IMG/VR virus record: IMGVR_UViG_3300032334_002567
Coordinates: 186,001 to 250,000 of that record
Direction: 5' to 3' (one strand)
Length of the DNA: 64,000 nt
How positions within the stretch are numbered: the first letter of the stretch is position 1; each line of letters opens with the position of its first letter. A model generated the notes under the pieces. It was not told where the DNA came from. It worked only from the letters and a program-made list of their open reading frames with translations, and made no database searches. Shown here in pieces: positions 639 to 61,115 of this stretch. The translations under genes and the position numbers were made by a program.

Positions 639-911
639 ATGAAAACATTTAGAGAATGGCAATTAAAAACAAACGAATCTGCGGATTATTCCGATTTGTT
701 TGATGCCGTCACCAAAGAAGGTGCGAAGCAGCAAATAAGCCAGATACTAGATGAGCACCCAGAATTGGTGGATGGAATAAAGAATTTTAAGCAGAATGAA
801 CCAGAAAAGTTCAAAAGAAGTATTAGTAATTTTAACAATAATAGCGTTGATTTAAATCTTTTGATTAAATTATCGAAGGGTAAGTTTCTCGGCTATTACG
901 ATTGGATGTAA
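639..911 (+). CDS. Hypothetical protein with head-targeting-like leader MKTFREWQL
   Basis: Start re-set to ATG 639 after GGAGGG; TATATA at 619-624. Confidence 0.7.
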   Translation: MKTFREWQLKTNESADYSDLFDAVTKEGAKQQISQILDEHPELVDGIKNFKQNEPEKFKRSISNFNNNSVDLNLLIKLSKGKFLGYYDWM

Positions 912-914
912 AGT

Positions 915-1199
915 GTGATAGGTGTTTGCCCTAGTTGTGGTTACAAACTAAACAACAAACTAAATGATGGTTTGTCAAATTGCATCAATTGCAATTGTGT
1001 CTTTAGTTCCACCGTTTTTAATGAGCTTTTAGCTGCCGCATGGCAGATAAGAAAAAACAATCTAACCATTGAGCAGGCACAAGAACAGATTAAAATAGAT
1101 AAAGACTTTATTGTTTTTGCTTTTTGCTTTGCTTCTCTTTTTGAATATTCGCATGATGAGTTTCTTTCTTTATTAAAAAAACTTGGTATCAAAAATTGA
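915..1199 (+). CDS. Small zinc-ribbon protein
   Basis: CPSC and CINC pairs. Confidence 0.6.
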   Translation: MIGVCPSCGYKLNNKLNDGLSNCINCNCVFSSTVFNELLAAAWQIRKNNLTIEQAQEQIKIDKDFIVFAFCFASLFEYSHDEFLSLLKKLGIKN

Positions 1200-1250
1200 T
1201 CGACTAGTTTGTTTCTGCTAAAATCTTCCTCGCAACCCGAGGACGCAGAA

Positions 1251-2258
1251 ATGAATGGAATAAGAATTTTTGGTCTAGGATCAAGCCTCAAATATGCAGA
1301 TAAAATTTCTGGTATTCTCGGTGTAAAAAGAACTCCACATATTGAACAATTTCACGATGACGATGAACCTTACGTTTTATCTCAGGAAAACGTAAGAGGT
1401 TGTGACGTTTTTATTGTTTCTAGTCTGCACTCATGCAATGAGGAAAGACTAGCAGACAAATTTTTAAAATTAATCTTATTTGCACGTTCTTTAAGAGATG
1501 CATCTGCAAAAAGAATAACTTTGGTGGTTCCTTATTTTGCTTTTCAAAGACAAGATAGAAAAACAGAAAGCAGAGCACCCGTATACACAAAGTATATTCC
1601 TGAAATAGTAGAAGGATTGCTAAGGCCAGATGATAGAATTTTAACTATGGATGCACACAATTTAAGTGCATACCAGAGCGGCCTCAGGATGATGTTGGAT
1701 CATCTAGAGGCAAAACCACTAATAGCAGACTGGTTTAGTCGTTCTGTTAATAGACTTTGGCCCGATCTAAATTTAGATAATTTGTGTTTTGCCTCCCCAG
1801 ATGAAGGTGGAGTTAAGCGAATAGGCTATTATCGGAAAAAAGTTCAATCAATAATGGGAATTTCAATTTCCACTGCATCTGTCTACAAAACGCACGAAGG
1901 AAGAGACATACATGCCCACGGAGTCATGGGCAACGTTGAAGGAAAAGATATTTTTCTTGGTGACGACATGATTTCTTCCGGTACCACCCTTGTAAAGGCT
2001 TATGACGCACTTTCAAGCATGGGTGGAAATGTGAGGGCTGCTATTGCGACACATGGCCTTTTTGTGGGTAAATCAAATGAAAATATTAAGTATCTGATTG
2101 ATAAAGGTGTCAGGATAATAACCACAGATACCATCCAAATAAATCGATTAAATGAAAATTTAAAAGAAAAAGTAATCACAATTCCAACATATGGGTTATT
2201 CGCAGAAGCAATTAGGTGTGTTCACAATGAAGAATCCATTAGTAGATTAATTTCTTGA
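1251..2258 (+). CDS. prs: Ribose-phosphate pyrophosphokinase (PRPP synthetase family)
   Basis: ENVRGCDVFIV, VPYFAFQRQDRK, SPDEGG, DDMISSGTTL and ATHGLF motifs; start re-set to MNGIR. Confidence 0.9.
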   Translation: MNGIRIFGLGSSLKYADKISGILGVKRTPHIEQFHDDDEPYVLSQENVRGCDVFIVSSLHSCNEERLADKFLKLILFARSLRDASAKRITLVVPYFAFQRQDRKTESRAPVYTKYIPEIVEGLLRPDDRILTMDAHNLSAYQSGLRMMLDHLEAKPLIADWFSRSVNRLWPDLNLDNLCFASPDEGGVKRIGYYRKKVQSIMGISISTASVYKTHEGRDIHAHGVMGNVEGKDIFLGDDMISSGTTLVKAYDALSSMGGNVRAAIATHGLFVGKSNENIKYLIDKGVRIITTDTIQINRLNENLKEKVITIPTYGLFAEAIRCVHNEESISRLIS

Positions 2259-2280
2259 AAAATTTTTTGAAAAATCAGTA

Positions 2281-3039: not shown

Positions 3040-3041
3040 AA

Positions 3042-8696: not shown

Positions 8697-8771
8697 ACAG
8701 TCAGTGTATCAATGTTGTGTCTTTGCGTCAAGGAAAGACGAATCAATTTTAAAATAATAAGGAGTGTTAAG

Positions 8772-20470: not shown

Positions 20471-20494
20471 ACATAAAATAATATATAATTCATC

Positions 20495-22777
20495 ATGCTT
20501 GGCTTTATTGAATACTTAGAGAATTACAATGAACAACAGCTTTTAGATATTATTCTAGAAGCTGTTGATATTGATTTAAGCAGCGTTGACGGCGAGTGGG
20601 ATAGCGGTCGAAGTAACTTCTATTTTAACGTTCCTGGAGACAATTGCCCAGAGAGTAGAAGAATATATCCTGGAGGAAGATGCTATAAAGTACACATTTA
20701 CGGAGGCGACAGTGTTAGTATCGCTTTTGATAGAGGAGGTAGCTACCAAGATGCTGACGCTGGTGCTGCTTTTAATGCTATAAGAATCATCCTTGCAGCA
20801 ATTGGCGTGTATTTAGAAGAAAAAAAGCCTTCAAAAATAAGTTGGAGTGCTGTTTCAAAAAGCAAAGCTAATAAAGTTACTGGACAAATGCAGAATCCAG
20901 ATGCCAGAGCAAGTATCTACGAAAGATGGGCTAAGAGGCACCTATTTCCAGATAAATATGTTCCTTTGAATCGTGATCATTGGATTTCTAGGGAAAAATA
21001 TGATAACGAATATGTTTCAAATGGATATCCAGCTATTCCTCAAACTATAAACTTGCAGAGTTCTGATCGTGAAAAAACTATTGTTATCAAAGATTTAAAA
21101 GAGAAAGCTGCGGCTGCACGTGAAGAAATCCAAAGAAGAGAAATAGAAGCTAGGGAGAGGGAAGAACAGGAACGTGAACGTGTAAGGACCGAAAGAGCAC
21201 AGGCGGCACAGCAAGACCCAAGGCACAATCCTGAAGGGCTTAAAGTTGATGATTTAATTTATGTGCTTCAAAATAGACAGTATGTTGAAGAAGGTACTAT
21301 AGGAAAAATTACGGGTTTTGATTTCCGTCCTATAGATCCATACGCAGAAGATCGGGGTTATAAGCTTTATGTCAATTTTAAACAACAGGTGTCAGATGGT
21401 TCATTTCGGTCAGACATTTTTAGGTTGCCCGTAGAAAATGTACAAAAAGACACAGAAGAAAGACGCTCTGAAAGAGAAAGACAACGTGTAGCCAAGCTAC
21501 AGGAACTACTTGCTGATCGTAGGAGTAATCCTAACGATATTAAAGTAGGAGATGAAGTTGCCTATCGTTCAAGACGAGGTGACATGAATGTTTTCACCGG
21601 CACAGTAGAAGACCTTAACTTCAAAAAAGAGTATGGCGACTATAAACTTCTGGTTAAAATAAACTGGGATGATTCTTCAAAAATTTCCATGAGTCATGCA
21701 AACATTGAGTTTGATAACTATGTCAATTTAGAAAATGTATCTAAAGCATCTGTTTATAAAGACAAACTAGCTAGTCTAATATCAGATAGAACTGCCAATC
21801 CAAATGGAATTAAGGTAGGAGATCAGGTAATAACTTTTTTGGCGAGTGATCCAACACATCGACACAATGGTATGGTTGGAAAAGTAAGAGAAATGATGTA
21901 TCAAGAAGGTTATAATTGGAGCGGTACAGCAAATGACTACAAGCTACTTGCATTTGTTGATTGGGATGAAAGATCCGCAACTTCTTTAGGCCCTAATCAG
22001 AACAGGGCTGTAGATGCAAAAAGCCTCATCCTAAACAATTCAGATGTTAACAACCGTATTCAGGCTGCTACAAGAGGGCATCAAGTTCAACAGCAAGTTG
22101 ATAGAAACAGAGAAAGACACGAAAGAAGACTACGAGATGATGAAGAGTTAAGACGAAGTCAGGAGTCTGGAATAAGCTCTCAGACGCCAGAAGAACTAGA
22201 AAGATTAGTCAATCATCCATCTAATCCACAAAAAATTAGACCTGGCGATTTCGTCAAAGTTGTTAATCACTGGAGAAGAGGCCTAAGAAATAAAAAAGGT
22301 GTAGTCGTAGGCCTATACAGTTACACTTATGATCGAGATATAATATATGTAAAAATAAAGATACATAGGTCTGATAGATCTGCTACAACCCTTCAAATTT
22401 CAAACGTAGAGAGAGACACATCAGCTACAGCAGCCAGAATACAGAATAGACAAGCTAGAAGAGATTCTGTGAGTGCTCTTTCTAGAGGCTTTAATATTGG
22501 AGATAGAGTAAAGGTAACAAGAGGAAGATACAATCAAAGAACAGGTAGGATATTAAACTTCCGACTAACCGCTAGTGATGCTTTGTCTGCGATAATCGTG
22601 TCAGACCAAGGTACAACCGGCGTAGACGGGACACACCAGCCTTTTCCGAATTTTAGTGTTAATGTTAATTTTATTGAAAGTTTACAGGGAACACCAACAC
22701 AGCCGTCTAATCATGGCCTACCAGAAAACAATTTAACTTTTTCTGATTACTTAAGAATAGTTGAAAGTTTTAGTTAA
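20495..22777 (+). CDS. Large protein with head-targeting-like leader and about five KOW/SH3-like repeats
   Basis: MLGFIEYLE; repeats NPxxxK[VP]GD.V and FNIGDRVKVTRGRY. Confidence 0.7.
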   Translation: MLGFIEYLENYNEQQLLDIILEAVDIDLSSVDGEWDSGRSNFYFNVPGDNCPESRRIYPGGRCYKVHIYGGDSVSIAFDRGGSYQDADAGAAFNAIRIILAAIGVYLEEKKPSKISWSAVSKSKANKVTGQMQNPDARASIYERWAKRHLFPDKYVPLNRDHWISREKYDNEYVSNGYPAIPQTINLQSSDREKTIVIKDLKEKAAAAREEIQRREIEAREREEQERERVRTERAQAAQQDPRHNPEGLKVDDLIYVLQNRQYVEEGTIGKITGFDFRPIDPYAEDRGYKLYVNFKQQVSDGSFRSDIFRLPVENVQKDTEERRSERERQRVAKLQELLADRRSNPNDIKVGDEVAYRSRRGDMNVFTGTVEDLNFKKEYGDYKLLVKINWDDSSKISMSHANIEFDNYVNLENVSKASVYKDKLASLISDRTANPNGIKVGDQVITFLASDPTHRHNGMVGKVREMMYQEGYNWSGTANDYKLLAFVDWDERSATSLGPNQNRAVDAKSLILNNSDVNNRIQAATRGHQVQQQVDRNRERHERRLRDDEELRRSQESGISSQTPEELERLVNHPSNPQKIRPGDFVKVVNHWRRGLRNKKGVVVGLYSYTYDRDIIYVKIKIHRSDRSATTLQISNVERDTSATAARIQNRQARRDSVSALSRGFNIGDRVKVTRGRYNQRTGRILNFRLTASDALSAIIVSDQGTTGVDGTHQPFPNFSVNVNFIESLQGTPTQPSNHGLPENNLTFSDYLRIVESFS

Positions 22778-34557: not shown

Positions 34558-34879
34558 AGCAGACTATATTGGGAAAGTAGCAATATTTTATATTCCCGAG
34601 AATAAGTTAACAAAATCTGTTAGAAAAGAACTTCATGATTTTTTTGTTAAAAACTATAACGCATATACACACGAAGTAAGTAAGATACAAGGTTATTGGG
34701 TCAAGCAAAACAAACTAATTAAAGACAAACACGAAAGATATGAAGTTGCTTTTGACGGAGAGCAAAATCTTAAGAAATTTGTCGGTTTTTTGTCTAAATT
34801 GTGCGATACCATAGAGGAAGATTCTATTTATTTAATTGTTGGTGATGAGTCTTATCTGGTAAGACCTAAGAAAAATTAA
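34523..34879 (+). CDS. Hypothetical protein with leader MNFKKWMTE
   Basis: Start re-set to 34523. Confidence 0.6.
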   Translation: MNFKKWMTEQPEADYIGKVAIFYIPENKLTKSVRKELHDFFVKNYNAYTHEVSKIQGYWVKQNKLIKDKHERYEVAFDGEQNLKKFVGFLSKLCDTIEEDSIYLIVGDESYLVRPKKN

Positions 34880-35185: not shown

Positions 35186-35443
35186 TTACTTATTTTCTTG
35201 TCTTTTGATTCTTTCGTGGTGTTGGTAAGTCATTTGACCATGATCTACTTCATCCTCATCGGCTTTTGGACCCAGCTTTTGTAAAGCATCTGCCGCAATT
35301 GGTGTAAAGTACCCAGCGGAGTAATGGCTCCTCATATACCCATCAGGATAGGCCCAGTGAGATATGCCTGCTCGTGCGGCTTTTTCAGATATTACTGGTA
35401 GCTCTTTTTTATTATCTGTGCAAAATTCTATAAATGTTTTCAA
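35186..35443 (-). CDS. Small protein with leader MKTFIEF
   Basis: AAGGA RBS; TAAATA upstream. Confidence 0.65.
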   Translation of the reverse strand: MKTFIEFCTDNKKELPVISEKAARAGISHWAYPDGYMRSHYSAGYFTPIAADALQKLGPKADEDEVDHGQMTYQHHERIKRQENK

Positions 35444-36945: not shown

Positions 36946-37107
36946 ATGAAAACTTTTAATCAGTGGCTTCAAGAAATGGTGGGGTCAAATTCGATAACGA
37001 CTTGCAAGGACAGAAAAAATCCAAATTTTCAAATTTGGGGAGCTATGTCTGACTTGGGCTGCAAGCCGGAAAAGAAAATTCCAACAATGAAATTCAATAA
37101 AAAATGA
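36946..37107 (+). CDS. Small protein with leader MKTFNQWLQE (53 aa; missing from the ORF track)
   Basis: Manual translation; TATATATAT just upstream; ATGA overlap with the PLA2 gene. Confidence 0.65.
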   Translation: MKTFNQWLQEMVGSNSITTCKDRKNPNFQIWGAMSDLGCKPEKKIPTMKFNKK

Positions 37108-37595
37108 AACTAAAATTTACAGAGTGGCTAAAATTAGAAGAAATCGATACTCGTAATCTTAAAGATTACATGAAGACTAAGTTTGATCTAAACATAGACG
37201 AATTACCTCTTAACCCTATGGACTACGCTAGTAGAGCTGAAACGGAACCAGAGGGTCAAGGATTAGACACTCAAGCACCTTGGTACAGATACGGAAACTA
37301 TTGCGGACCAGGACCGGCATTAGCTAGTTCATGTAATAAACTTGCAACAGGAGATAAGCTTCCTCCTGCGAAGAACAGTGTTGACAGTCAATGTAAGAAT
37401 CATGATGTTGATTACTGTAAATGTGGAGTAGATTGGAAGGCTGGATTGCCGGGTGGTGGCACACCTTGTTCAAAAGAAGCCGATAAAGATTTTGTTTCAG
37501 GCCTTCAAAGATTAAGAAAAAAGATAAATCCAGAAGAAAGAAGGATAGCGGATATTATTAGGACTTATTTTACTTGGAAGAAAATATTCGGTTAG
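37104..37595 (+). CDS. Phospholipase A2-like protein with head-targeting-like leader
   Basis: YGNYCGPG Ca2+ loop; DSQCKNHDVDY catalytic His-Asp; downstream ADKDF. Confidence 0.8.
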   Translation: MKLKFTEWLKLEEIDTRNLKDYMKTKFDLNIDELPLNPMDYASRAETEPEGQGLDTQAPWYRYGNYCGPGPALASSCNKLATGDKLPPAKNSVDSQCKNHDVDYCKCGVDWKAGLPGGGTPCSKEADKDFVSGLQRLRKKINPEERRIADIIRTYFTWKKIFG

Positions 37596-39088
37596 TGATT
37601 TCTATTTTCTACTTGAGCTAGTTGTTGTCCAACAATTGGTGTTCTTGTTTGCTTTCTTAACATCTCAGGAACAAATGGTACATCGTACTTCTTAAGTACC
37701 TCTTTAAGGTTATTCGCATAAGGTGCTAAACTTGGACTTTGTAGGTCGTTATTTTTGATTGCCTTTATCACATTATCGATGTTCTGCTTGGTTGGCGGGA
37801 AGTTCAATTCTAAGTCGCCGGAATCTGTTTTCTTAATTAAGTGTTCATTGCTAAAACCTTCTGCGTTTCTAAAAAAGGAACCATCTTTATTTAAAAGCAA
37901 TACTTTATTATTATAGTAATAAGTTGCGGGGTCATGTTTAACCATAATTCCTTCATAAAGTTGAGACTGATTTCCATACCATTTTACCACAACTATTGTA
38001 TTGATTAGCTTGCTTAAAAAAGATTGAATTTTTCTTTTAAATTCCTTTTCTTTACGTATTTTCTTTAGTCCTATTACAGTGTCTCTTTGTGTTTGTAATA
38101 TGGACATCAAAGCTTCTTTTTTATAAGAACTCGGCAGTGTTTTTATTATTTCTCGGATGTAACTTCGGGTTAGATACAAATTAGGAGAAACCCTTAAAAA
38201 ATCAGCGGGTCTCAAATAATCTGTGTAGAATCTCTGATACATTAAGCTCATTGCAGGATCGGCTGCAGAGAAATTAAAGCCATTTACTTTTGACCCAGAT
38301 TTTTCTTCTTCTTGATTCATTTTCGCCACAGAAGCCAATAAATGATTGTATATTTCTAAAGCGGTTTTTGTGTCGTTATTTTTTGTAAGGCTGTAGCCGT
38401 TTGGTCCTTCAAAATATATTTCATAAACATTTTTTAATTGCTTGCCTTGAAAGTTTATGCTTGATGGTTCGATACCTACTTTGTATTCGTTGCCTTTTAT
38501 TTCAAACTTTGCTTCATAGCCTCCATGGCTGTCTGGTGGGTTTTCTTCTTCATGAGAAATTCTACGTTCTTCCTGTTCTGATTCGTGGTCACTCATTTTT
38601 TCTTGTACACAGGCGTCTATTGCTTCATCTCGGGCTTTTCTTATAGCTTCTTCCATTTCTTCTCTTCTTTCATCCATTTTATCTCGCCAATCTTGTAGAG
38701 CACTATCATATTCAGACTGAGCACTTTCTAGTTCTTCTTCCCAATTAGCAACTGCCTCTTCATGTTCCTCATCTGATGACGAGTCTTCTCTTTCTGGTTT
38801 GGGGTTTTCTTTTTCCCATTCCTCTCCATTTATGTGTTCAAAGTCTGGGTCTTCATCTGGCTCATCATATATGGGTTCGTCATAAACATCTTCATAACTA
38901 ATGTCATCACCCGCATCCATACAATCTTCATAAGCACTATCATGATCAAATTCTTCTCCTTCGAATTCTTCTGATTCACCAGGTCTTTTTTTTAGTTTGA
39001 TTTTGTCGAGTGGTAATTGAGAGGCACTACGCAAACCTTCCCAGAATATTTCGCCGTTATTACTTAGCCATTCACTGAAGTTGAACAT
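37592..39088 (-). CDS. Paralog-family protein with leader MFNFSEWL and a long acidic insert
   Basis: D/E-rich N-terminal third; shared FEGPNG...IYNHLLASV...GFNF...YL.P domain. Confidence 0.75.
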   Translation of the reverse strand: MFNFSEWLSNNGEIFWEGLRSASQLPLDKIKLKKRPGESEEFEGEEFDHDSAYEDCMDAGDDISYEDVYDEPIYDEPDEDPDFEHINGEEWEKENPKPEREDSSSDEEHEEAVANWEEELESAQSEYDSALQDWRDKMDERREEMEEAIRKARDEAIDACVQEKMSDHESEQEERRISHEEENPPDSHGGYEAKFEIKGNEYKVGIEPSSINFQGKQLKNVYEIYFEGPNGYSLTKNNDTKTALEIYNHLLASVAKMNQEEEKSGSKVNGFNFSAADPAMSLMYQRFYTDYLRPADFLRVSPNLYLTRSYIREIIKTLPSSYKKEALMSILQTQRDTVIGLKKIRKEKEFKRKIQSFLSKLINTIVVVKWYGNQSQLYEGIMVKHDPATYYYNNKVLLLNKDGSFFRNAEGFSNEHLIKKTDSGDLELNFPPTKQNIDNVIKAIKNNDLQSPSLAPYANNLKEVLKKYDVPFVPEMLRKQTRTPIVGQQLAQVENRNH

Positions 39089-39091: not shown

Positions 39092-39403
39092 TTATTCCTC
39101 TACAAAAAAAGCTTTCTCCCACCAGTCATCGTTTATCTGTTGGAAGCCCGCAGCCAAATATTCAGCAGTTTTGTCTTTGCTAACAAATTTCGCATGACCT
39201 GCACCGTCATAAGCAAGGTACATTGAAGTATTTGGAATTCTTGCAATAAAATTGGATCCCTGATTCATTACCTTCCCAGATTGATTTATCGTGGGTGGAG
39301 ATTTCTCAAACTGCATATCAACTGCAGCTACAATTTGATCTTTAATTTTCACCGGATGCGGCAAAGTGAAGCTTGCCATTTCTATAAATTGTTTAAATTC
39401 CAT
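39092..39403 (-). CDS. Small protein with leader MEFKQFIE
   Basis: TATATA 4 nt before the ATG. Confidence 0.65.
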   Translation of the reverse strand: MEFKQFIEMASFTLPHPVKIKDQIVAAVDMQFEKSPPTINQSGKVMNQGSNFIARIPNTSMYLAYDGAGHAKFVSKDKTAEYLAAGFQQINDDWWEKAFFVEE

Positions 39404-40184: not shown

Positions 40185-41420
40185 ATGAATTTTAAACAAT
40201 GGCTCCTTACAGAAGAGCGTCAATCAATGGGTGCATCTATCCCCATGCCAGATGAAGTACAAATTCTATCCAATCTGTTTAGTAGTTTTGGAGCTAAATT
40301 GTATGCTGTTGGTGGAGCTATAAGAGACTACTTATACCATATATTCCACGATAGACATATTCCTTACAACCCCAAAGACGTAGATTTAACCACAGATCAA
40401 CCACCAGATCAAGTTACAAGAATACTTAGCTCTCCAGCAGCAGTTCAGCATGGGATTAGGGTCTTACCTAAGGGAGAAAGCTTTGGAGTTATCAGTGCTA
40501 TTATAAATGGCAAAGAATTTGAGATCGCAACCTTCCGAACAGAAGTCTATGATGCTGCCACGGGTGATGGCAGAAGACCAGATAGTGTTCAATACAGTAC
40601 AGCCGCTGAAGACGCCAAGCGTAGAGACCTTCACATAAACGCATTGTTCTATGATCTTCATAGCAAAGAAATACATGATTACAATGTAGATGAGAATGGA
40701 GAGGGAGAAGGATTTAAGGACATTAGGAACAAAAAAGTTAGAGTTGTAGGAGATCCTTTTGAGAGATTTAGAGAAGATAAGCTTAGAGTTTTAAGGCTTG
40801 TCAGATTCTTTTGTAGGTTTAATGAGGACGTGATAACCAGTCACTTAGATTCAAGAACATTATCTGCCGTAGATAACTTCAAGGATTTGAAGGGAGTTAG
40901 TGGCGAAAGAATAGCAAATGAATTTATTTCTGGACTTAAGACTTGTAAGAGTACAAAAAACTACATTTTAAGCTTCAAGTCTTTGGGGTTGATACCAACA
41001 ATATTTCCCGGCTTAAATGTTAATACTTCTGAAATGGATGCTATGGACTCTTCAAGAAACTCAATAGCAGTCACTGCTTTTTTACTCAGAGACAATGATA
41101 TAAAAGTTATTAAATCTAAGCTAAATTCACTCAAGTACTCTAACGAATTTATAAACACACTTTCTTTGGTGCTCATGGCAGCTTACAAATTAGATAAGTC
41201 TAATTTTATTCGTTTGTTAAGAATGAGAGATAATCTAAATGATAGCTTAAAAAGTTCGCTTGTTGAATTCGGTAAAATAAGTGGTCTGGAAAGAGAAATG
41301 AGTCATTTTGTACATTACACTCAAGTCACAAAATCAGAAGACTATATGCATCTACAGAATGAAAAAAGAGGAGAGAAGATGAGTGAAGATGAATACGAAA
41401 ATTATAAGGAAAATTCATGA
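40185..41420 (+). CDS. cca: Class II tRNA nucleotidyltransferase (CCA-adding enzyme) with leader MNFKQWLLTEE
   Basis: VGGAIRD, DVD, EIATFR.E, RRDLHINAL, FREDKLRVLR; poly(A) polymerase GRRF signature absent. Confidence 0.88.
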   Translation: MNFKQWLLTEERQSMGASIPMPDEVQILSNLFSSFGAKLYAVGGAIRDYLYHIFHDRHIPYNPKDVDLTTDQPPDQVTRILSSPAAVQHGIRVLPKGESFGVISAIINGKEFEIATFRTEVYDAATGDGRRPDSVQYSTAAEDAKRRDLHINALFYDLHSKEIHDYNVDENGEGEGFKDIRNKKVRVVGDPFERFREDKLRVLRLVRFFCRFNEDVITSHLDSRTLSAVDNFKDLKGVSGERIANEFISGLKTCKSTKNYILSFKSLGLIPTIFPGLNVNTSEMDAMDSSRNSIAVTAFLLRDNDIKVIKSKLNSLKYSNEFINTLSLVLMAAYKLDKSNFIRLLRMRDNLNDSLKSSLVEFGKISGLEREMSHFVHYTQVTKSEDYMHLQNEKRGEKMSEDEYENYKENS

Positions 41421-41908
41421 ACTCTTTCATTTCTTGGCTAGAAAATAGAGATAGAAAAGAACTCATACTAATGAGAGGTGTTTCATCATCGGGTAAAAGC
41501 ACTGTAGCTAAAAGTTTGGTTGGCGGTGGAAAGATATTCTCTACAGATGACTTTTTCATGCAGGGAAATAGGTATGTTTTTGACCCAAAAAATATTGGTA
41601 CAAACCACAAACTAAACCAGAGCAGAACAGAAGAAGCTATGAAACAGGGTATTAGTCCAATTATAATAGATAATACTAATACTGAGTCTTGGGAGATGAA
41701 ACCTTACGTTTTATTGGCCGATAATTATGGATACTCAATAAAAATAGTAGAACTACCACCTTTAGACATAGAAGAGTTGATGAGACGACAAGAGAGTAGA
41801 AGATCTTTTAATAAGGCTTTGCCTAGAAAGTCCTTGGAGCGGGCGATAGAGCGCTATCAACACAATGTAAGTGTAGACGATATTCGAAATAGTTCGCCTC
41901 CTTTTTAA
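41417..41908 (+). CDS. AAA_33/N4BP2-like P-loop polynucleotide kinase with leader MNSFISWLE
   Basis: RGVSSSGKST, STDDFF, IIDNTN, WEMKPYV; ATGA-coupled to cca. Confidence 0.82.
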   Translation: MNSFISWLENRDRKELILMRGVSSSGKSTVAKSLVGGGKIFSTDDFFMQGNRYVFDPKNIGTNHKLNQSRTEEAMKQGISPIIIDNTNTESWEMKPYVLLADNYGYSIKIVELPPLDIEELMRRQESRRSFNKALPRKSLERAIERYQHNVSVDDIRNSSPPF

Positions 41909-41910: not shown

Positions 41911-42498
41911 ATGTGTTTATTTGATGCCTTAATCCTTTTATATTGTTCTCCAATTATACTGCTTTATTTTTTGATGTGCTCAACCATACCTTTCATCAGG
42001 GTAGGAGAAATAAAGAAGGGTAAGGGTGTAGATTTGTTTATTTGCCGGGATATAATCCACTCAGACTTTATTTTTAAATCTAGTCTTTGGAGTGAAGTTT
42101 TTGAGCCAAAAGGCGAATACATTAAAATCGGTTGGGGAGACAGAAAAATATTCTTAGAAACAAAGGTTTGGGCTAATCTAAGAGCCTTTGATGTAATGAC
42201 AGCATTTGTCGGTATCAATAAAACAGTTTTAAGAGTAGAGTTTTTGGACACAGTGCCAGAAGGCTGTGTCAAAATGGAAATAGATGACTGCCAACTAGAA
42301 GTGATTAAAATCCACGTTAACCAATCTTTTAGTGGTAAACCTATAAAGAAGCAAAGTTGGCACTGTGAACGTGGAGACTTTTACGAGTCTAAGTTGAGAT
42401 ACAATTGTATAACAAATTGCAATAACTGGGTTAATCGTGCTCTCTTCGTATGCAGAGCAACCAATAGAGTTTGGTGTCCACTAAGTTTATACTTTTAG
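41911..42498 (+). CDS. DUF2459-like protein
   Basis: IHSD, IGWGDR, TNCNNW. Confidence 0.7.
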   Translation: MCLFDALILLYCSPIILLYFLMCSTIPFIRVGEIKKGKGVDLFICRDIIHSDFIFKSSLWSEVFEPKGEYIKIGWGDRKIFLETKVWANLRAFDVMTAFVGINKTVLRVEFLDTVPEGCVKMEIDDCQLEVIKIHVNQSFSGKPIKKQSWHCERGDFYESKLRYNCITNCNNWVNRALFVCRATNRVWCPLSLYF

Positions 42499-42692
42499 TG
42501 CTTTTTCTTTTTGTGATTTTTCTTTTTATGTTTTTTCTTGAGGCTGTTGCGACTAGCCTTTACATAAACTTGATCCGACCCAGTTTGATTCGCTAGTGGA
42601 GGATGAGTTCCTATACCGCCATATTGGGGTGGGTAAATTCCAACTATTCCTTCTCCAAGTCTGCTTTTTAGAAATTCAAAAAATGTTTTCAT
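42495..42692 (-). CDS. Small basic protein with leader MKTFFEFL
   Basis: LGE after the leader; K/H-rich tail. Confidence 0.65.
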   Translation of the reverse strand: MKTFFEFLKSRLGEGIVGIYPPQYGGIGTHPPLANQTGSDQVYVKASRNSLKKKHKKKNHKKKKH

Positions 42693-43000
42693 TGGTTAAA
42701 TACGTTCTTTCCTGTTGAAGCTTGCATTTTGCTTGTTTCTTCTACTAGCTGTTCAAATAAAGCTAACATTCTGGGATTTCTTGCAACATACCTTAGTAAA
42801 GGAACATATGTGTTTGACTTCTCTCCAATTTTATTTGAAATTCTATTTAGAACTCTTGCAAATGCATTTTTGTCCTCGTGCCCGGTATTTAGCTCGTTAT
42901 CATCAGGGTTAGCAGCGGCCTGTGTTTGTCTATTAGTCATTTGAGGGTTTGCTACAATCGGTTGTGCATTCATATTTTGAACTAATTCATAGAAATTCAT
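42689..43000 (-). CDS. Hypothetical protein starting MNFYELV
   Basis: AAGGA RBS; TATATA at 43027. Confidence 0.6.
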   Translation of the reverse strand: MNFYELVQNMNAQPIVANPQMTNRQTQAAANPDDNELNTGHEDKNAFARVLNRISNKIGEKSNTYVPLLRYVARNPRMLALFEQLVEETSKMQASTGKNVFNQ

Positions 43001-43132: not shown

Positions 43133-43567
43133 ATGATTAAATTTAGTGTATGGTTAGAAAACAAGATTAAAGCTATTCGAACAGCTAGTGATGCTGAGTT
43201 GGACCAAGTTGTCAAGGGAGCACCTTACACTTCTCCTATGTTAAGAAGAATTAACTATTTAACAAATAATGGGAAACCGTTCGATCCTTCTAGTCCGGTA
43301 AATGATTACTTTCAACATTATGTTGGCGTTAACAAAACAAGATCTAGAAAAGCAAATAAAGATAGAGCCTGGGCTTTAGGGCTGGAAGTGCCAGAAGAAG
43401 ATAGAGAAATAATTCGGGTCGGGGGCATTGAAAAACCCAGCAGTGCGGTTCCTTATCTTAAACCAGATCACATAAAAACAATTACTAGGCTGGGTGCAGG
43501 AAAGCAAAAGCCCAGAGATGCACAAAGATTTGTAGGTACTTACAAAAGATTATTTGGCGAAAGATGA
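43133..43567 (+). CDS. Hypothetical protein with leader MIKFSVWLE
   Basis: Coupled to the next gene. Confidence 0.65.
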   Translation: MIKFSVWLENKIKAIRTASDAELDQVVKGAPYTSPMLRRINYLTNNGKPFDPSSPVNDYFQHYVGVNKTRSRKANKDRAWALGLEVPEEDREIIRVGGIEKPSSAVPYLKPDHIKTITRLGAGKQKPRDAQRFVGTYKRLFGER

Positions 43568-44280
43568 AAACATTCAAACAATACCTAGAAGATCGTCAAA
43601 TAATGATTTTTTCTACTAGACCGGTAGAGTTATATCATGGTTCAAACACTGGAGCCGATAATAGTGCTTTAAATAGCTTGTTAAAAGATGGCATTAAACC
43701 AACAGTAGCTCAAGGACATGGCCAAGGATCAGGTTTTTATGTATGGTCAGATAAAAACAGTGCCATCAACCACACTAAAGCCATAACCTCAGGCTCTATT
43801 ACAACTAATGCTAAGACAGACGGTCTTCCAATGATAGTAACAGTCGAAGCCATAGCAGACCCAGAAAAATGGGATTTAGATTATGAATCTAATAAACGAT
43901 CAATCGTTAATTGGCTACATGATAATTTTGAAAAACTTCAACCGCTATTGAAACCAGAAGACAAAGTTCAACTAAGGTCTAAACAGAATAGAGAAATCGT
44001 AAACAATAGAGATGAAAAAATAATGTCAAAGGGTGTAAGTGTTTCTTTAGAGACTTACAAAACACTATATGCTCAGAGTGAACCTAATATTCGGGACGGA
44101 GAGGTTATAGCACCAATTATAAATAAGCTACAACAAAAAGACCCTCAAACTGTACATAAATTCGAAGAACTATTTTTTGCCAACATGAAGCCAGGGGTTG
44201 CAATAAAGTATGTTGGCAGTGAAATATTAAGACCCAAAAGAATAGAGATATTTAAAGATGGTCAATGGGTTCAAGCTTAA
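43564..44280 (+). CDS. ADP-ribosyltransferase-like (H-Y clade) protein with leader MKTFKQYLE
   Basis: LYHGS...SLLKDGI...GSGFYV...A pattern of PARP/diphtheria-toxin-type ARTs. Confidence 0.6.
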   Translation: MKTFKQYLEDRQIMIFSTRPVELYHGSNTGADNSALNSLLKDGIKPTVAQGHGQGSGFYVWSDKNSAINHTKAITSGSITTNAKTDGLPMIVTVEAIADPEKWDLDYESNKRSIVNWLHDNFEKLQPLLKPEDKVQLRSKQNREIVNNRDEKIMSKGVSVSLETYKTLYAQSEPNIRDGEVIAPIINKLQQKDPQTVHKFEELFFANMKPGVAIKYVGSEILRPKRIEIFKDGQWVQA

Positions 44281-44648: not shown

Positions 44649-45032
44649 TTATTCTGGTTTTGAAGAGTAGTGATTTCCACTTCTTGTCATTCTTGACCAT
44701 GAAGAGAAATCAGAAGATCTTAGCTTGCTACCTTTTTCAGCTAATCCAATAGCTTTACTAACTGCTTCTTTTATTTTGGATTCTTCTTTTAATCCATATT
44801 CTAAAGTTCTTTTAATTTCAAGAAAGACTTTTAGCAACTCACTATTTAATTCTACAAAGTTTGCTATTCTTTCGTCTTTTTCATCTATCATGTCTGCGAT
44901 TTGACGCAAATGATGTGTATGAGAAACCTCTGATTTGAGTGTGCCCGCTGGAGGAGTGCGTGGAAGGCCAATATCCCCGGTCGGCGGTACATTTTCGGAT
45001 GATGATTCTAAAAATTGCTCAAAACTTTTCAT
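44649..45032 (-). CDS. Hypothetical protein with leader MKSFEQFLE
   Basis: AGGAG RBS; TATATA at 45058. Confidence 0.7.
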   Translation of the reverse strand: MKSFEQFLESSSENVPPTGDIGLPRTPPAGTLKSEVSHTHHLRQIADMIDEKDERIANFVELNSELLKVFLEIKRTLEYGLKEESKIKEAVSKAIGLAEKGSKLRSSDFSSWSRMTRSGNHYSSKPE

Positions 45033-55289: not shown

Positions 55290-55337
55290 TGTAATTTATA
55301 TACTATCATAATATATCTAAATTAACAGGGGAAATAA

Positions 55338-56762: not shown

Positions 56763-57412
56763 AAAAATATATCGCTATTTTATCGCTGTTACTAATTATT
56801 ATTATTGGATATTTCTGCATAGAAAATCACGAATCATATAGCAAAGAAGAAATTACTTTCACTATAGACAAACCCTATTTATCAACAGTAAAGGGTCTAG
56901 CAACAAAGAACTCTTTAGAGAAAATGGTAGAAGAAAATGATGGTATGCTTGTTTACAAGAACTGGGAGAATTTTGATATTGAAGTGCCCCAAAGAATATT
57001 GAGAATAAAAGAATATAAAGTACATGGCAAACTCAGATTTACGGTAGAAAAAACAGATCATGATCTTGGACAAATTAAATTACCATTTATACAAGAAATA
57101 CATTTAGACAACCACATCTTTGACATAAGCACTAAACTAGTTTCACCACAAAAACACGTACCATCCTACAACAAGACCATACAAATAAGTCCGCTCTTTG
57201 AAGACAACAATAAGATCGCTCAAAAAACTCATGTAAAAATAAGCAGTGAACTTAAGATAAAGAAATTAATACCAATATTTTTCAAAAAATTTATGGACGA
57301 TAAGGTAGAGCAAACCAACCAAAAAGATATAGACCAACTCAAGAACAATATATTAAATATATCTAATCAAAAAAGTATATTAACTTTTAAGCTACAACCT
57401 CAAGGGATTTAG
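56759..57412 (+). CDS. Membrane-anchored hypothetical protein
   Basis: N-terminal hydrophobic helix; ATGA-coupled to the peptidase. Confidence 0.65.
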
Positions 57413-58481
57413 AAGGCTCGTTTTGTAGCCATGTAGAAAAAGGCCCAGAAGGCTTATAGGTTTTAAGTACCTCTTCAAAGTTACGACTATAAGCCGCTGC
57501 ATTTGTGGGATGAGAGATACCCCTCATAGTAGCCATTCCTGATGGAAGAGGTATCGAAACTCCTGTTGCTTTTATATTTTCTATTGCATGTAATACTTCA
57601 TCTATTTGGCTCTTGGTAGGAGCCGCAGTGAGCTTAAATTTAGGAAACTCACCTTTAATTGAGGTATTTCTTATTATATCATTATGGTGTACATCTATCA
57701 TGTTCAGTTTTTTATCTTTTAAAACAAACATCTTAACAAAATTGGTAAAAGACAGTGGCGGTCCAACTGCAACTATAAAACCTACAACTTGTTTCATACT
57801 ATTTGACGCATGATCTACGCCATTAAAAGCAACAATTCTATTTACCATTTTATTTAAAAATGCCGTTGCTGCTCTATCGACCATTTTTTCTTTTCTTGCA
57901 TCATTTATTCCTTTATCTGCTTCTTTATTGTTGTCTGCTATTTGCCCCAAAACATTTTTCTTATCTGGACCACTCAACCCAGACATAAGTTGTCTAATGT
58001 ACGGTTTCTTTAAGTACAGCTGTGAATTCACCCTGAGATAACCAGCAGGTTTTAGATAATCTTTGTAAAATTTTCTATACATTAGAGCCATCTTAGACTC
58101 GGCCGGGGTGAAGACAAATCCTTGTACATTTTTTTCGACATCTACCATTTTTACTACCGATGCCAGCACATGGTCATAAACGCTTTTTGCAACGCCGGGA
58201 TTATTTTTATTTGCTGTAAGGAATCCAGTTGGACCATGAAAACTTATGTCATAAACTTTTTCTAAGATTTTTCCAATGAATTTTTTATTTTGTAAAGATT
58301 TTATGTCTACGGTGTAATCGTCTTCGCCTATCTTAAACTTGCTAACATAGTTTGCTTGACCTCTGTTGTCAAAAAAACTCGTCAAATTAACTTTATCCAA
58401 TGGTAGAATGCTTGTATCTCTTGCAACTTCCAGATAGTCACAAAGAATCTCTTCAAACTCGAACCAATTTCTAAATTCCAT
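57387..58481 (-). CDS. Paralog-family protein with leader MEFRNWFEFEE
   Basis: FHGPTGF...VYDHVLASV...GFVF...ESKMALMY.KFYKDYLKP. Confidence 0.75.
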   Translation of the reverse strand: MEFRNWFEFEEILCDYLEVARDTSILPLDKVNLTSFFDNRGQANYVSKFKIGEDDYTVDIKSLQNKKFIGKILEKVYDISFHGPTGFLTANKNNPGVAKSVYDHVLASVVKMVDVEKNVQGFVFTPAESKMALMYRKFYKDYLKPAGYLRVNSQLYLKKPYIRQLMSGLSGPDKKNVLGQIADNNKEADKGINDARKEKMVDRAATAFLNKMVNRIVAFNGVDHASNSMKQVVGFIVAVGPPLSFTNFVKMFVLKDKKLNMIDVHHNDIIRNTSIKGEFPKFKLTAAPTKSQIDEVLHAIENIKATGVSIPLPSGMATMRGISHPTNAAAYSRNFEEVLKTYKPSGPFSTWLQNEPSKSLEVVA

Positions 58482-58551
58482 GCTTTTCCTAATATTTTCT
58501 ATTATTTTGTAATATTTTATATACACTTTCTCTTATACATTTAGGTGTAAT

Positions 58552-59868
58552 ATGGAACATATATTTCAAAAAGAACAATTTGGCGAAGATTGGTTCACCT
58601 CTCCTGATCTTTATTCCCGTATGGTTAAAAAAGCAATAAATGGGAGCATATTTGTTGAGGTGGGTTCTTGGAAAGGCAAATCTTCTTCCTATATGGCCAC
58701 AGAAATAATTAACTCAAATAAGGACATACAGTTCTTTTGTGTTGATACTTGGGAAGGCAGTATAGAACATGAAGGAATGGAATTAGATAATCTTTATGAA
58801 ACTTTTTTAAATAACATGAAACCTTTAGAGTCTTATTATTTTCCTTTAAAAGTCACATCAATAGAAGCAAGTAAAAAGTTTAAGGACAATTCCTTAGATT
58901 TTGTATTTTTAGATGCTTCTCACGAATATGAAGATGTTAAAGCGGATATCTTGGCGTGGCTACCCAAAGTAAAACCGGGCGGAGTTCTCGCTGGTCATGA
59001 TTATTACCAAGAAACTGATTACTTTCCGGGTGTAAGTAAAGCAGTAGATGAAGTTTTAAACAACTTTGAAATTGTTGATAATTGTTTTGTGTTTTACAAA
59101 GACAAGCTAAGAAACTTCCCATCAGTTAATTTTATAAGCATAGAAGAAAGCCAACACAGAAGAGATTTATTAAAAAAGAAGTTCAATTCTTATGGTATCA
59201 AAAATACAACAGGATATGTTTTTGAAAGATATAAAGAAGGTGATTGCAACCTATTTGGAGAAATGATTATTGATCTAAAAACAGAAAGTAAAGGACCGGT
59301 AACATCTCACTTAAAAGCAATCAAAGATTGGTATAATAATACGAACGAACCTTATGCATTTTTCTGTGAAGATGATTTAAGCCTAGAAACAGTTAAATAT
59401 TGGAACTTTACTTGGGAAGAATTCTTTGCTCGACTCCCCAAAGATTGGGGTTGTGTTCAACTTGCTTGGATACGTGATGAGTTTTTCAAGTTCGGATACA
59501 AACTAAGAAACAGATGCTGGTGTGATTGGTCTGGGTGTGCCTACCTATTAAGCAGAGAACACGCTAAGAAGCTAATAGAATCATACCACTATGACGATAA
59601 CTTTTACCTAGACTTCAAAGGATCAGACACAGATGCAAGAGAAGATTGGGCTAAAGTACCAGTTATAGAAACAGTAATCTTTTCCCCAGTTACAAAGGTG
59701 TACTCTTTTCCAATGTTCGTTGAAGACGTAATTCTTTGTAACTCTACTTACCAAGAAGGCCAAGGAGATATGCACTTTGGCTCACATCACAACACAATAG
59801 AATTTTGGAAGAATATAGGTAAATATGCTTCTTTAAATGAACTTGTTGATCATTCTATTTTGCACTAG
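58552..59868 (+). CDS. SAM methyltransferase (Methyltransf_24-like) fused to a GT25-like domain
   Basis: VEVGSWKGKS, FVFLDASH, GGVLAGHDY; then SHLKAI, FCEDD. Confidence 0.82.
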   Translation: MEHIFQKEQFGEDWFTSPDLYSRMVKKAINGSIFVEVGSWKGKSSSYMATEIINSNKDIQFFCVDTWEGSIEHEGMELDNLYETFLNNMKPLESYYFPLKVTSIEASKKFKDNSLDFVFLDASHEYEDVKADILAWLPKVKPGGVLAGHDYYQETDYFPGVSKAVDEVLNNFEIVDNCFVFYKDKLRNFPSVNFISIEESQHRRDLLKKKFNSYGIKNTTGYVFERYKEGDCNLFGEMIIDLKTESKGPVTSHLKAIKDWYNNTNEPYAFFCEDDLSLETVKYWNFTWEEFFARLPKDWGCVQLAWIRDEFFKFGYKLRNRCWCDWSGCAYLLSREHAKKLIESYHYDDNFYLDFKGSDTDAREDWAKVPVIETVIFSPVTKVYSFPMFVEDVILCNSTYQEGQGDMHFGSHHNTIEFWKNIGKYASLNELVDHSILH

Positions 59869-60037
59869 CAGCTATCGTTTCTTTCAACTTTTGATTCTCA
59901 GTCTTTAAGAACTTAATCTGATTTTCCATGTCGGTAATCGCACGAATAATCCTATAAACCTGATTGCTCTTTTCTTGCTCATAGGTATTGGTAGCAAGAC
60001 GCTTTAATTCATTCATATCATCTAAAGAAATAGGCAT
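59855..60037 (-). CDS. Small coiled-coil protein
   Basis: AGGAGG RBS. Confidence 0.6.
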   Translation of the reverse strand: MPISLDDMNELKRLATNTYEQEKSNQVYRIIRAITDMENQIKFLKTENQKLKETIAASAK

Positions 60038-60056
60038 AAATCCTCCTGTATTACCA

Positions 60057-61115
60057 TTAAGATAGTACAGCTGGAACAGAACTGGGAAAAGATAATTTGT
60101 ATCTATCGAGAATTTTTTGTAAAAAAATAGCTGTTTGGTTAGGACTTCCTTCCCAAGAATCTATGGACTTCTTGATAGAAGCCAAAATAGGTTCTATTTC
60201 GCTCTTTGTTGCAGGAGGCAATAGTTCGAAACGGCCATTGTCTGCAGACTGGAAAAAATCCTTATAAGGAATGGAATAATCCCATCCAGTACCATTCTGT
60301 ACTATTATTACTTTAGCTAATCCATCTGAAGTATGAAGTTCTTTTAAAATTCCAATTGATCGTGGTCGGTTTGCCCAACCATCAGTTCCATGAGAAGCAA
60401 AAGGAACTATGTGACCTATCATGCGTTTCAAAGTAGGTTCTGCTTGTCTGTTCAAAGCTTTTAAATTTCTTATTTTTTTAAGCCCTTCTTTTTCTGATCT
60501 TAAATTATCTCTTATTTGTTTCGCTACTTTAGGCTTTTCTTCTGCTTTTAAAAGTTCACGGAGATAATTTTTTCTAACAATGAACCCTCCCGAACCTTTT
60601 ATGAATCCATTTGGTCTCAAGTACTCTTTATAGAACTTGTCATAAATTAAAGCCATTTTGCTTTCTTGAGGACGAAAAACAAAACCATTTACCTCTCTAC
60701 CTTCTTCTTTTTCTCTTTTCATCATCTTCCATATAGAAGCTAATAAGTGGTCATAAACTTGCCTAGCCGTTGCAGCATTATTTCCTCCAGTAGTCTGGAA
60801 ACCTTTAGGCCCATGAAACGCAACACTAAAAAGATTGTTAATATCAATCCAACGTTCCACAGAAACACCGTCAGTTTTTGTTACCGGCAATTGATCATTT
60901 GTTCTTTCCATTTCTACTTTATAAGGAACTCTGTCAACCTTAAAGGTCGAATAATAATTATCTGGTGGATCAATATTAGAGATATCGTCCTCATATTCAT
61001 CATCGTAATTATCGCTATCAGGAGCAAAGCCTATTCCAAGCTTAACGCTTCCTGTAGGCAATAGGTTTGGGTCTCTAGCCTCTATTGTTATCAACCACTC
61101 TTTAAAACTTATCAT
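60057..61115 (-). CDS. Paralog-family protein with leader MISFKEWL
   Basis: FHGPKGF...VYDHLLASI...GFVF...ESKMALIY.KFYKEYLRP; TATATA 4 nt before the ATG. Confidence 0.75.
   Translation of the reverse strand: MISFKEWLITIEARDPNLLPTGSVKLGIGFAPDSDNYDDEYEDDISNIDPPDNYYSTFKVDRVPYKVEMERTNDQLPVTKTDGVSVERWIDINNLFSVAFHGPKGFQTTGGNNAATARQVYDHLLASIWKMMKREKEEGREVNGFVFRPQESKMALIYDKFYKEYLRPNGFIKGSGGFIVRKNYLRELLKAEEKPKVAKQIRDNLRSEKEGLKKIRNLKALNRQAEPTLKRMIGHIVPFASHGTDGWANRPRSIGILKELHTSDGLAKVIIVQNGTGWDYSIPYKDFFQSADNGRFELLPPATKSEIEPILASIKKSIDSWEGSPNQTAIFLQKILDRYKLSFPSSVPAVLS

What the first reader, a model, noticed from the sequence alone, without database searches (positions are those of the whole stretch)
639..61115. 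About 17 mostly unrelated genes share a T4 capsid-targeting-like leader: candidate packaged and injected cargo set
Seen: near-identical N-termini on otherwise mostly unrelated proteins: MKTFREWQL (639), MLGFIEYLE (20495), MNFKKWMTE (34523), MKTFIEFC (35443-), MKTFNQWLQE (36946), MKLKFTEWLKLEE (37104), MFNFSEWL (39088-), MEFKQFIE (39403-), MNFKQWLLTEE (40185), MNSFISWLE (41417), MKTFFEFL (42692-), MIKFSVWLE (43133), MKTFKQYLE (43564), MKSFEQFLE (45032-), MEFRNWFEFEE (58481-), MISFKEWL (61115-), and weaker MNFYELV (43000-). They cluster at 34.5-45 kb and are absent from the sigma-70-driven operons. Known: T4 internal proteins carry an MKTYQEFIAE-type capsid-targeting sequence removed by the gp21 prohead protease after Glu. 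Inference: this phage uses a portable ~10-aa tag to load many enzymes into the head for delivery with the DNA.
Basis: partly seen in the sequence, partly recalled or inferred. Interest (0 to 1): 0.9.

Follow-up and report, generated by a model that had tools for sequence, protein, structure and literature searches.

The report
T4-like head-targeting tag on many phage genes
About fifteen otherwise unrelated genes of this 381-kb uncultured phage begin with the same ten-residue leader as the one phage T4 uses to load proteins into its head, and thousands of related phages carry it too, so it probably marks a large set of proteins that are injected with the DNA.

Summary
All 17 N-termini sit at the stated coordinates. 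A profile trained only on other phages recovers 14 of them and nothing else in six frames (0.3 hits expected in shuffles). Consensus: Met, 1-3 residues, Phe, x, x, Trp/Phe/Tyr, Leu/Ile, then Glu within 1-2 residues in about 60%.

Codons vary, so the constraint is on the protein. Fourteen carriers are unrelated; three are paralogues.

The conserved positions 4, 7, 8 and 10 are those mapped in T4 IPIII for head targeting and processing. The tag is widespread in viral contigs (111 exact-pattern hits against 5 for a scrambled control). It is enriched 30-fold at gene starts next to T4-type (PF03420) prohead protease genes, and it occurs on genes fused to the portal operon. The capsid protein of that clade starts with a matching aromatic-Leu-x-Glu decapeptide.

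Tagged cargo includes a CCA-adding enzyme, a kinase, an ADP-ribosyltransferase-like fold and a PLA2-like protein.

Not shown: packaging or cleavage. No head protease or capsid gene was found in the 46% of this contig that I could read.

Verdict: a probable capsid-targeting tag system, a new variant of a known kind. Confidence about 0.65.

The parts
639..911 (+). tagged gene, 90 aa, function unknown (variant: W followed by Q-L)
   Evidence: JGI call uses the same start; profile score 13.0
20495..22777 (+). tagged gene, 760 aa, no known domain; TATATAA 13 nt before the ATG
   Evidence: 14.4
34523..34879 (+). tagged gene, 118 aa; start is an internal ATG of ORF 34412-34879
   Evidence: 12.5
35186..35443 (-). 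probable tagged gene, 85 aa, TTG start, no Glu after the tag
   Evidence: fits the regex but falls below the profile threshold
36946..37107 (+). tagged small protein, 53 aa, pI 9.8; homologues in other phages keep the tag
   Evidence: 19.3
37104..37595 (+). tagged gene, 163 aa, weak PLA2-like domain (PF08398)
   Evidence: E 2.4e-5; 18.2
37592..39088 (-). tagged gene, 498 aa, paralogue family; roughly 140-aa acidic insert after the tag
   Evidence: 14.8
39092..39403 (-). probable tagged gene, 103 aa; TATATAA 10 nt before the ATG
   Evidence: below the profile threshold
40185..41420 (+). tagged CCA-adding enzyme / tRNA nucleotidyltransferase, 411 aa; Pfam domain starts at residue 39
   Evidence: 13.3
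41417..41908 (+). tagged AAA_33 (polynucleotide-kinase-like) kinase, 163 aa; domain starts at residue 16
   Evidence: 15.7
42495..42692 (-). tagged small protein, 65 aa, pI 10.3
   Evidence: 15.3
42689..43000 (-). weak candidate (MNFYELV), not counted as tagged
   Evidence: no match
43133..43567 (+). tagged gene, 144 aa, pI 10.0, function unknown
   Evidence: 12.6
43564..44280 (+). tagged gene, 238 aa, ADP-ribosyltransferase-like fold; tag helix at residues 4-13, disordered linker, domain from about residue 21
   Evidence: 22.8
44649..45032 (-). tagged gene, 127 aa, function unknown
   Evidence: 15.0
57387..58481 (-). tagged gene, 364 aa, paralogue family
   Evidence: JGI call; 14.6
60057..61115 (-). 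tagged gene, 352 aa, paralogue family; confident model with no known fold match; close homologues read ...WL-LNE-ARD, with the same Leu-Asn-Glu-Ala as the clade's capsid protein
   Evidence: 12.9

Best explanation
The leader is a capsid-targeting sequence of the T4 internal-protein type, used on a much larger scale.

Proposed mechanism:
1. A short N-terminal amphipathic helix, with aromatic residues at positions 4 and 7 and Leu/Ile at 8, docks the protein onto the scaffolding core while the prohead assembles.
2. The T4-type (PF03420) prohead serine protease then cuts after a nearby Glu (aromatic-Leu-Glu or aromatic-Leu-x-Glu) and frees the cargo inside the shell.
3. The cargo stays with the packaged DNA and enters the host with it, acting before any phage gene is expressed.

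The cargo would include RNA-repair enzymes (CCA-adding enzyme, kinase), an ADP-ribosyltransferase-like enzyme, a PLA2-like protein, small basic proteins and a three-member family of unknown fold.

Shown: the motif, its statistics, its add-on nature, its match to the functionally mapped T4 positions, and its association with PF03420-protease phages and head operons.

Inferred: binding to the scaffold, cleavage, presence in virions and injection, and that this particular contig has such a protease.
For: 1. The motif is real and specific to N-termini.

2. Fetched T4 sequence shows the same pattern on ipI, ipII and ipIII. In IPIII, residues 4 and 7 govern targeting and residues 8 and 10 govern processing, and gp21 cuts after L/I-x-E (PMC9026906).

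3. At database scale, the exact pattern for MKTFx[EQ]WL gives 111 viral hits, 89 of 118 matches at ORF starts. An equal-information scrambled pattern gives 5.

4. Sixteen of the 111 tag-selected loci carry T4-like gp21, gp23 or gp20 within 15 kb or less. In loci selected by the protease alone, 130 of 1538 proteins are tagged against 22 of 7727 internal Met positions (odds ratio 32, p = 2e-79). The protease family is PF03420, with more than 7120 members.

5. Tagged genes overlap the stop codon of the portal gene (L139, L145), the position of the T4 core proteins gp67/gp68. A syntenic tagged gene diverges from the head-operon promoter region.

6. The clade's capsid protein begins M-x-x-N-A-[KR]-F-L-N-E-A, and homologues of window gene 61115 contain Leu-Asn-Glu-Ala right after the tag. 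Both suggest a shared cleavage site.

7. A T4-late-promoter-like TATATA[ACT]/TATAAAT lies within 100 nt upstream of 52% of head operons, 39% of tagged genes and 14% of other genes. In the window the figures are 7/17 against 5/93.

8. Add-on behaviour. In both models the tag is a low-confidence detached helix.

9. The tagged 43564 protein has an ART-like fold. Its best PDB match is a cyanophage pre-ejectosome chain (E = 6.4e-4), which parallels the packaged ADP-ribosyltransferase Alt of T4.

10. This contig shares genes at 68-75% identity with a 323-kb contig that has the protease.

11. Controls: 2/162 (both hydrophobic false positives) in an AT-rich non-T4 phage, 0/59 in the scrambled-pattern loci, and only 25% of hits in cellular genomes at ORF starts.
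Against: - No PF03420 protease, gp23-like capsid or portal gene was found in contig positions 130,334-307,115, the 46% I could read. This contig was also absent from the top-80 and top-120 protease lists.
- No window gene has a T4 homologue.
- Only about 60% of tags have Glu 1-2 residues after the Leu. In the window, several have the first Glu 3-7 residues later, and 35443- has none nearby.
- With Glu directly after Leu, the P3 residue is aromatic rather than the Leu/Ile of the T4 rule.
- At least 25 cargo species of up to 760 aa would be far more than any documented case.
- CCA-adding enzymes and kinases are not known virion components.
- In the paralogue family the tag is ancestral across 209 clusters, so there it could be an integral structural element rather than an add-on.
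- No proteomic or cleavage data exist.
Confidence: 0.65

Rival explanations
1. The leader is a recognition motif for another machine rather than the prohead. One option is an N-terminal degron or adaptor site for the phage-encoded ClpX (window 8712-10031) that times the removal of these proteins. Another is an address for some other phage-made compartment or complex.
For: The window encodes a ClpX homologue, and N-terminal ClpX recognition motifs are established knowledge. The tag is a detached, flexible N-terminal helix. Tagged enzymes such as the CCA-adding enzyme and the kinase are typical cytoplasmic early-function proteins. The head module is not near the window cluster.
Against: T4 has no ClpX, yet it uses the same motif for head targeting. 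The tag tracks PF03420-protease loci and portal operons. The capsid protein itself carries the matching aromatic-Leu-x-Glu leader. Co-occurrence with ClpX was not tested.
Confidence: 0.15
2. The shared leader is a structural or genetic by-product with no targeting role. It could be a conserved first helix inherited within families, or a conserved 5' cassette end that promotes gene shuffling by recombination.
For: In the paralogue family the tag is conserved across 209 clusters at 50% identity. Tagged genes sit in variable accessory regions.
Against: At least 15 unrelated families carry the tag in the window alone. Synonymous codons differ, so there is no DNA-level homology to recombine on. Orthologues keep the pattern while changing the sequence. 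Some homologues lack it cleanly.
Confidence: 0.08
3. The motif reflects a translation-initiation constraint, for example on leaderless or short-leader mRNAs starting just after a TATATAA element, rather than a protein signal.
For: Several tagged genes have TATATA[AT] ending 3-6 nt before the ATG and no Shine-Dalgarno sequence. AAA as the second codon is common.
Against: Other tagged genes have clear Shine-Dalgarno sequences. The conserved positions are aromatic and Leu residues encoded by varying codons (TGG/TTT/TAC; TTA/CTT/CTA/CTC/TTG), which is protein-level selection. Untagged genes with the same upstream element exist.
Confidence: 0.04

Closest known systems
[quoted passage not shown]
   Same: An N-terminal leader of about 10 residues, starting at Met1, on otherwise unrelated proteins. 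It has aromatic residues at positions 4 and 7, Leu/Ile at 8 and Glu at 9-10. It is associated with a PF03420 prohead protease that cuts after Glu. Cargo includes an ADP-ribosyltransferase-like enzyme and small basic proteins.
   Different: Trp dominates at position 7, and Glu often follows Leu directly. There are at least 25 carriers in 177 kb of this genome, against 3-4 in T4. Cargo includes enzymes of up to 760 aa and RNA-repair enzymes. The hosts are uncultured phages whose capsid protein is only about 28-30% identical to T4 gp23. Tagged genes are scattered far from the head module.
Propeptide-bearing ejection proteins of giant phages (phiKZ, SPN3US; PMC5694885, PMC7411985, PMC10052503)
   Same: Many head-internal proteins in a very large capsid, matured by a gp21-related protease cutting after Glu, then ejected into the host.
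   Different: By my own knowledge of those papers, their propeptides are long and dissimilar and the cleavage motif is small-residue-x-Glu. No short shared N-terminal tag is described there.
Head-packaged effectors inferred from MuF/portal fusions and polyvalent proteins (PMC9503650)
   Same: ART, Nudix, kinase and RNA-repair-type domains predicted to be delivered with the DNA. One tagged protein elsewhere matches ART-PolyVal, and the 43564 model resembles large phage proteins of the ParB/ART type.
   Different: In those cases packaging is inferred from fusion to a structural domain or from gene neighbourhood, not from a detachable 10-residue tag.
Encapsulin cargo-loading peptides
   Same: A short terminal peptide directs diverse enzymes to the interior of an HK97-fold shell. 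This is an analogy from established knowledge.
   Different: Those peptides are C-terminal, are not removed by a protease, and belong to cellular nanocompartments rather than virions. No sequence relationship was tested.

Membership tests
T4-type capsid targeting sequence / internal protein system | Leader starts at the initiator Met and is about 10 residues long | tested here: met
   The detached helix spans residues 4-13 and 4-10 in the two models.
T4-type capsid targeting sequence / internal protein system | Aromatic residues at positions 4 and 7 (targeting determinants in IPIII) | tested here: met
   Phe/Tyr and Trp/Phe/Tyr three residues apart in all counted tags. Position 4 in most, 3 or 5 in some. 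Mapping of the T4 positions comes from PMC9026906.
T4-type capsid targeting sequence / internal protein system | Leu/Ile at position 8 and Glu at position 10 (processing determinants; gp21 site L/I-x-E) | tested here: inconclusive
   Leu/Ile/Met/Phe is always present at position 8. Glu lies 1-2 residues later in 60% of 130 tags and in 9 of 17 in the window, and further away in most of the rest. The Leu-Glu variant does not fit the T4 P3 rule.
T4-type capsid targeting sequence / internal protein system | Carried by otherwise unrelated proteins as a portable module | tested here: met
T4-type capsid targeting sequence / internal protein system | Same genome encodes a gp21-type (PF03420) prohead protease and a gp23-type capsid | tested here: inconclusive
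   Met in relatives on the same contigs (323-kb, 251-kb and 572-kb contigs). Not found in the 46% of this contig that was read. The remaining 54% could not be read.
T4-type capsid targeting sequence / internal protein system | Leader removed by the protease; mature protein present in virions and ejected | not testable with these tools
   Needs virion proteomics with N-terminal mapping.
ADP-ribosyltransferase fold (window 43564-44280) | ART/PARP-like fold with a conserved His ... Tyr ... Glu triad | tested here: inconclusive
   Invariant H25, the G-F-Y-V block and E201. Foldseek matches PARP catalytic domains only weakly (probability 0.3-0.57). The best hit is a cyanophage pre-ejectosome chain, E = 6.4e-4. 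No Pfam hit.

The most novel reading that the evidence does not exclude
A simple, sequence-readable N-terminal tag defines a large and previously unrecognised injected proteome. It would apply across a clade of thousands of uncultured phages with T4-type head proteases, including genomes of 250-600 kb. Individual phages would pre-load dozens of enzymes (tRNA repair, ADP-ribosylation, lipid hydrolysis and unknown folds) into the capsid for immediate use on entry.
Probability: 0.5. Interest if true: 0.85.

Novelty: new variant of a known kind. Interest (0 to 1): 0.78.

Why it matters
If the tag works as in T4, proteins that travel inside the capsids of uncultured phages could be read directly from sequence. 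At present that needs purified virions and mass spectrometry. It would show that very large phages bring a ready-made toolkit of RNA-repair and host-modifying enzymes, and it would give many proteins of unknown function a place and time of action. It would also supply natural variants of a tag already used to load foreign proteins into T4 heads. The full-text library I searched describes CTS-like leaders only for T-even relatives. For other phages it infers packaged enzymes from domain fusions and gene neighbourhood.

Tried and rejected
**Hunt for this contig's head module**
- Twelve look-ups walked the contig from 130,334 to 307,115. They found translation, replication and sugar-modification genes but no capsid, portal or protease gene.
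- A protease alignment and the protease of the closest relative were used to fetch loci, and a protein search was run. This contig was not among the 80 or 120 best in any of them.

**Searches that returned nothing useful**
- Megablast of the tag cluster against GenBank phages: no match.
- BLASTP of window genes against 135 kb of T4: nothing meaningful.
- Sigma-70 and terminator scan: no better than shuffles.
- PDB sequence searches for three tagged proteins: nothing.
- The paralogue family gave a confident model with no fold match and no Pfam hit.

**Limited results and rejected ideas**
- The idea that the motif is a nucleotide-level element was rejected because codons vary.
- A Sec or Tat signal was rejected because no hydrophobic stretch follows the motif. 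The look-alikes with such a stretch are the false positives seen in cellular genomes.


Full report
**What the window is**

The window is positions 186,001-250,000 of IMG/VR contig IMGVR_UViG_3300032334_002567, which is 381,443 bp long with about 36% G+C. Near-identical copies exist in an ENA assembly (224-kb scaffold) and a Logan assembly. It has bacterial-type ribosome-binding sites, two tRNAs and phage-style gene content:
- In the window: ClpX, CsrA, a ribose-phosphate pyrophosphokinase, an SNF2 helicase, a T4 Rnl1-like RNA ligase and a sigma-factor-like protein.
- In the flanks: bS21, IF3, DnaJ, peptide deformylase and DNA polymerase III alpha.

No GenBank phage is close.

**Checking the observation**

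The loose regex (Met, 1-3 residues, Phe, two residues, aromatic, Leu/Ile/Met/Phe) matches 22 of 1211 open ATGs in six frames. Fourteen of these are at real gene starts, which is 14/108 starts against 8/1103 other ATGs (p = 1.6e-10).

To avoid circularity I built a position matrix only from tags of other phages and scanned every ATG, GTG and TTG of the window. It gave 14 hits, all at claimed sites. Shuffles gave a mean of 0.3, and the reversed sequence gave none. Two further claims (35443-, 39403-) fit the regex but score lower. One (43000-) is weak.

Codons for the conserved residues differ between genes, so the protein is what is conserved.

After removing the first 15 residues, only three carriers (39088-, 58481-, 61115-) are related to each other.

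Over the 177 kb of the contig that I could read, 22 of 293 first-ATG genes carry the tag. Three more use other starts. They include eight or nine outside the window.

**What the carriers are**
- 40185 is a CCA-adding enzyme whose Pfam domain starts at residue 39.
- 41417 is an AAA_33 kinase whose domain starts at residue 16.
- 37104 has a weak PLA2-like match.
- 43564 has 30 homologues and no Pfam domain. With their alignment AlphaFold gives a confident model (pLDDT 86.6). In it, residues 1-20 form a low-confidence detached helix plus linker, and the rest is an ADP-ribosyltransferase-like fold. The best PDB match is a chain of a cyanophage pre-ejectosome, followed by PARP catalytic domains. 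The viral library returns large ParB/ART-type phage proteins.
- The three paralogues belong to a family of 209 clusters with a confident model but no known fold.
- The rest are small proteins, several of them basic, of unknown function.

**Comparison with T4**

I fetched 135 kb of T4. ipII and ipIII begin with the string quoted in the finding. ipI and the hypothetical 54-aa gp61.1 begin MKTFKEF.... No other annotated T4 gene in that stretch fits convincingly.

The review PMC9026906 reports three relevant points:
- The first 10 residues of IPIII suffice for head incorporation.
- Residues 4 and 7 matter most for targeting, and residues 8 and 10 for processing.
- gp21 cuts after L/I-x-E.

Those are exactly the conserved positions here.

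**Breadth and association with T4-type heads**

- An exact DNA pattern for MKTFx[EQ]WL finds 111 stretches in IMG/VR, with 89 of 118 matches at ORF starts. Neighbouring genes carry other variants. A scrambled pattern of equal information finds 5.
- In bacterial and archaeal genomes only a quarter of matches are at ORF starts, and many of those run into hydrophobic segments.
- Sixteen tag-selected loci contain T4-like gp21, gp23 or gp20. One such capsid gene is 77% identical to that of the 595-kb uncultured phage LR756511.
- When loci are selected by the protease alone, 8.5% of proteins are tagged, against 0.28% of internal Met positions. The protease family is PF03420, with more than 7000 members.
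- Within these head modules, tagged genes directly follow the portal gene, and another diverges from the head-operon promoter region.
- The capsid protein begins with a decapeptide ending aromatic-Leu-Asn-Glu-Ala. Close homologues of window gene 61115 have the same Leu-Asn-Glu-Ala straight after the tag.
- A TATATA[ACT]/TATAAAT element resembling the T4 late promoter (established knowledge) precedes 52% of head operons, 39% of tagged genes and 14% of other genes. In the window the figures are 7/17 tagged against 5/93 untagged genes.
- Controls: an AT-rich non-T4 Clostridioides phage has 2/162, both hydrophobic false positives. The scrambled-pattern loci have 0/59.

**Add-on test**

- Phage and other CCA enzymes align to the window protein only from residue 18-36.
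- The versions in LR756511, LR756502 and LR745206 have tag-like N-termini. Those of mycobacteriophage Myrna and Bacillus phage G do not.
- Orthologues of the kinase, of the 53-aa protein and of the 65-aa protein keep the pattern with different residues.
- In the 43564 family, 25 of 28 homologues have the tag followed by a conserved junction, and three begin exactly after it.

**What is missing**

I could not find the head module of this contig. Twelve look-ups covered 130,334-307,115 without a capsid, portal or protease gene (and the walking calls). Three ranked searches also did not bring the contig up.

The contig shares several genes at 68-75% identity with a 323-kb contig that has the protease. 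So membership of the clade is likely, but it is not shown.

Nothing here demonstrates packaging, cleavage or injection.

**Conclusion**

The simplest reading is that this is the T4 capsid-targeting mechanism on a much larger scale and in very distant relatives. I put that at about 0.65.

The main rival is another N-terminal recognition function, for instance linked to the phage ClpX. It cannot be excluded, but it does not explain the ties to portal operons, to the protease clade and to the capsid leader.

The kind of system is known. The scale, the cargo and the phage group appear not to be described in the literature I could search.

Noticed in passing
L113:18966-19130 (T4 NC_000866, gene 61.1, minus strand): The hypothetical 54-aa T4 protein gp61.1 starts with a leader almost identical to that of ipI and ends the motif with Ile-Lys-Glu. 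It may be an unrecognised internal protein of T4 itself.
   Followed up: partly
L167:11574-12998 and about 85 other loci: The gp23-like capsid protein of this clade starts with a conserved decapeptide M-x-x-N-A-[KR]-F-L-N-E followed by Ala. This looks like a very short propeptide with a gp21-type cleavage site, unlike the 65-residue propeptide of T4 gp23.
   Followed up: partly
window 20482-20494, 36935-36945, 39404-39413, 61116-61125, 25477-25489, 55290-55302: TATATA[AT] elements end only 3-6 nt before the start codon, with no Shine-Dalgarno sequence. This suggests leaderless or near-leaderless transcripts from a T4-late-like promoter.
   Followed up: partly
window 32082-33086, 40185-41908, 45586-46197: There is an RNA-repair gene set: a T4 Rnl1-like RNA ligase and a metallophosphoesterase (both untagged), with a CCA-adding enzyme and a kinase (both tagged). 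Only part of the pathway carries the leader.
   Followed up: partly
window 37592-39088 (minus strand): In the 498-aa paralogue, a highly acidic insertion of roughly 140 residues separates the tag from the conserved core. In the other two paralogues this stretch is a short linker.
   Followed up: no
window 3910-4086 (minus) and contig 182,789-182,980; window 8712-10031: The phage encodes two CsrA homologues and a ClpX homologue. A second sigma-like protein and an RNA polymerase alpha C-terminal-domain fragment lie in the left flank.
   Followed up: no
contig 143,231-143,479 (L274:3420-3668) and neighbours: Ribosomal protein bS21, IF3, peptide deformylase and DnaJ genes cluster about 40 kb left of the window. 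Unlike in the bS21 phages of PMC9723584, bS21 is not next to head genes here.
   Followed up: partly
window 63561-63824 (minus strand): This ORF translates to a repetitive Gly/Val/Leu-rich sequence (GVGVLVAGMGVLV repeated). It is probably a tandem DNA repeat rather than a gene.
   Followed up: no
window 61590-62009 (minus strand): This 139-aa gene has about 20 homologues that usually sit a few kb downstream of the capsid gene in protease-selected loci. Here it lies next to a tagged gene and a tRNA-Gly, far from any head gene.
   Followed up: partly
L268 (Roseobacter phage DSS3P8 gp136): Its CCA-type enzyme begins M-R-I-T-P-E-W-L-K-T-D. This is half of the motif, without the first aromatic residue, in a phage not known to be T4-like.
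   Followed up: no
window 55338-56762: A 474-aa protein has a weak subtilase (Peptidase_S8) match, next to a tagged paralogue. It is not the head protease type expected.
   Followed up: no
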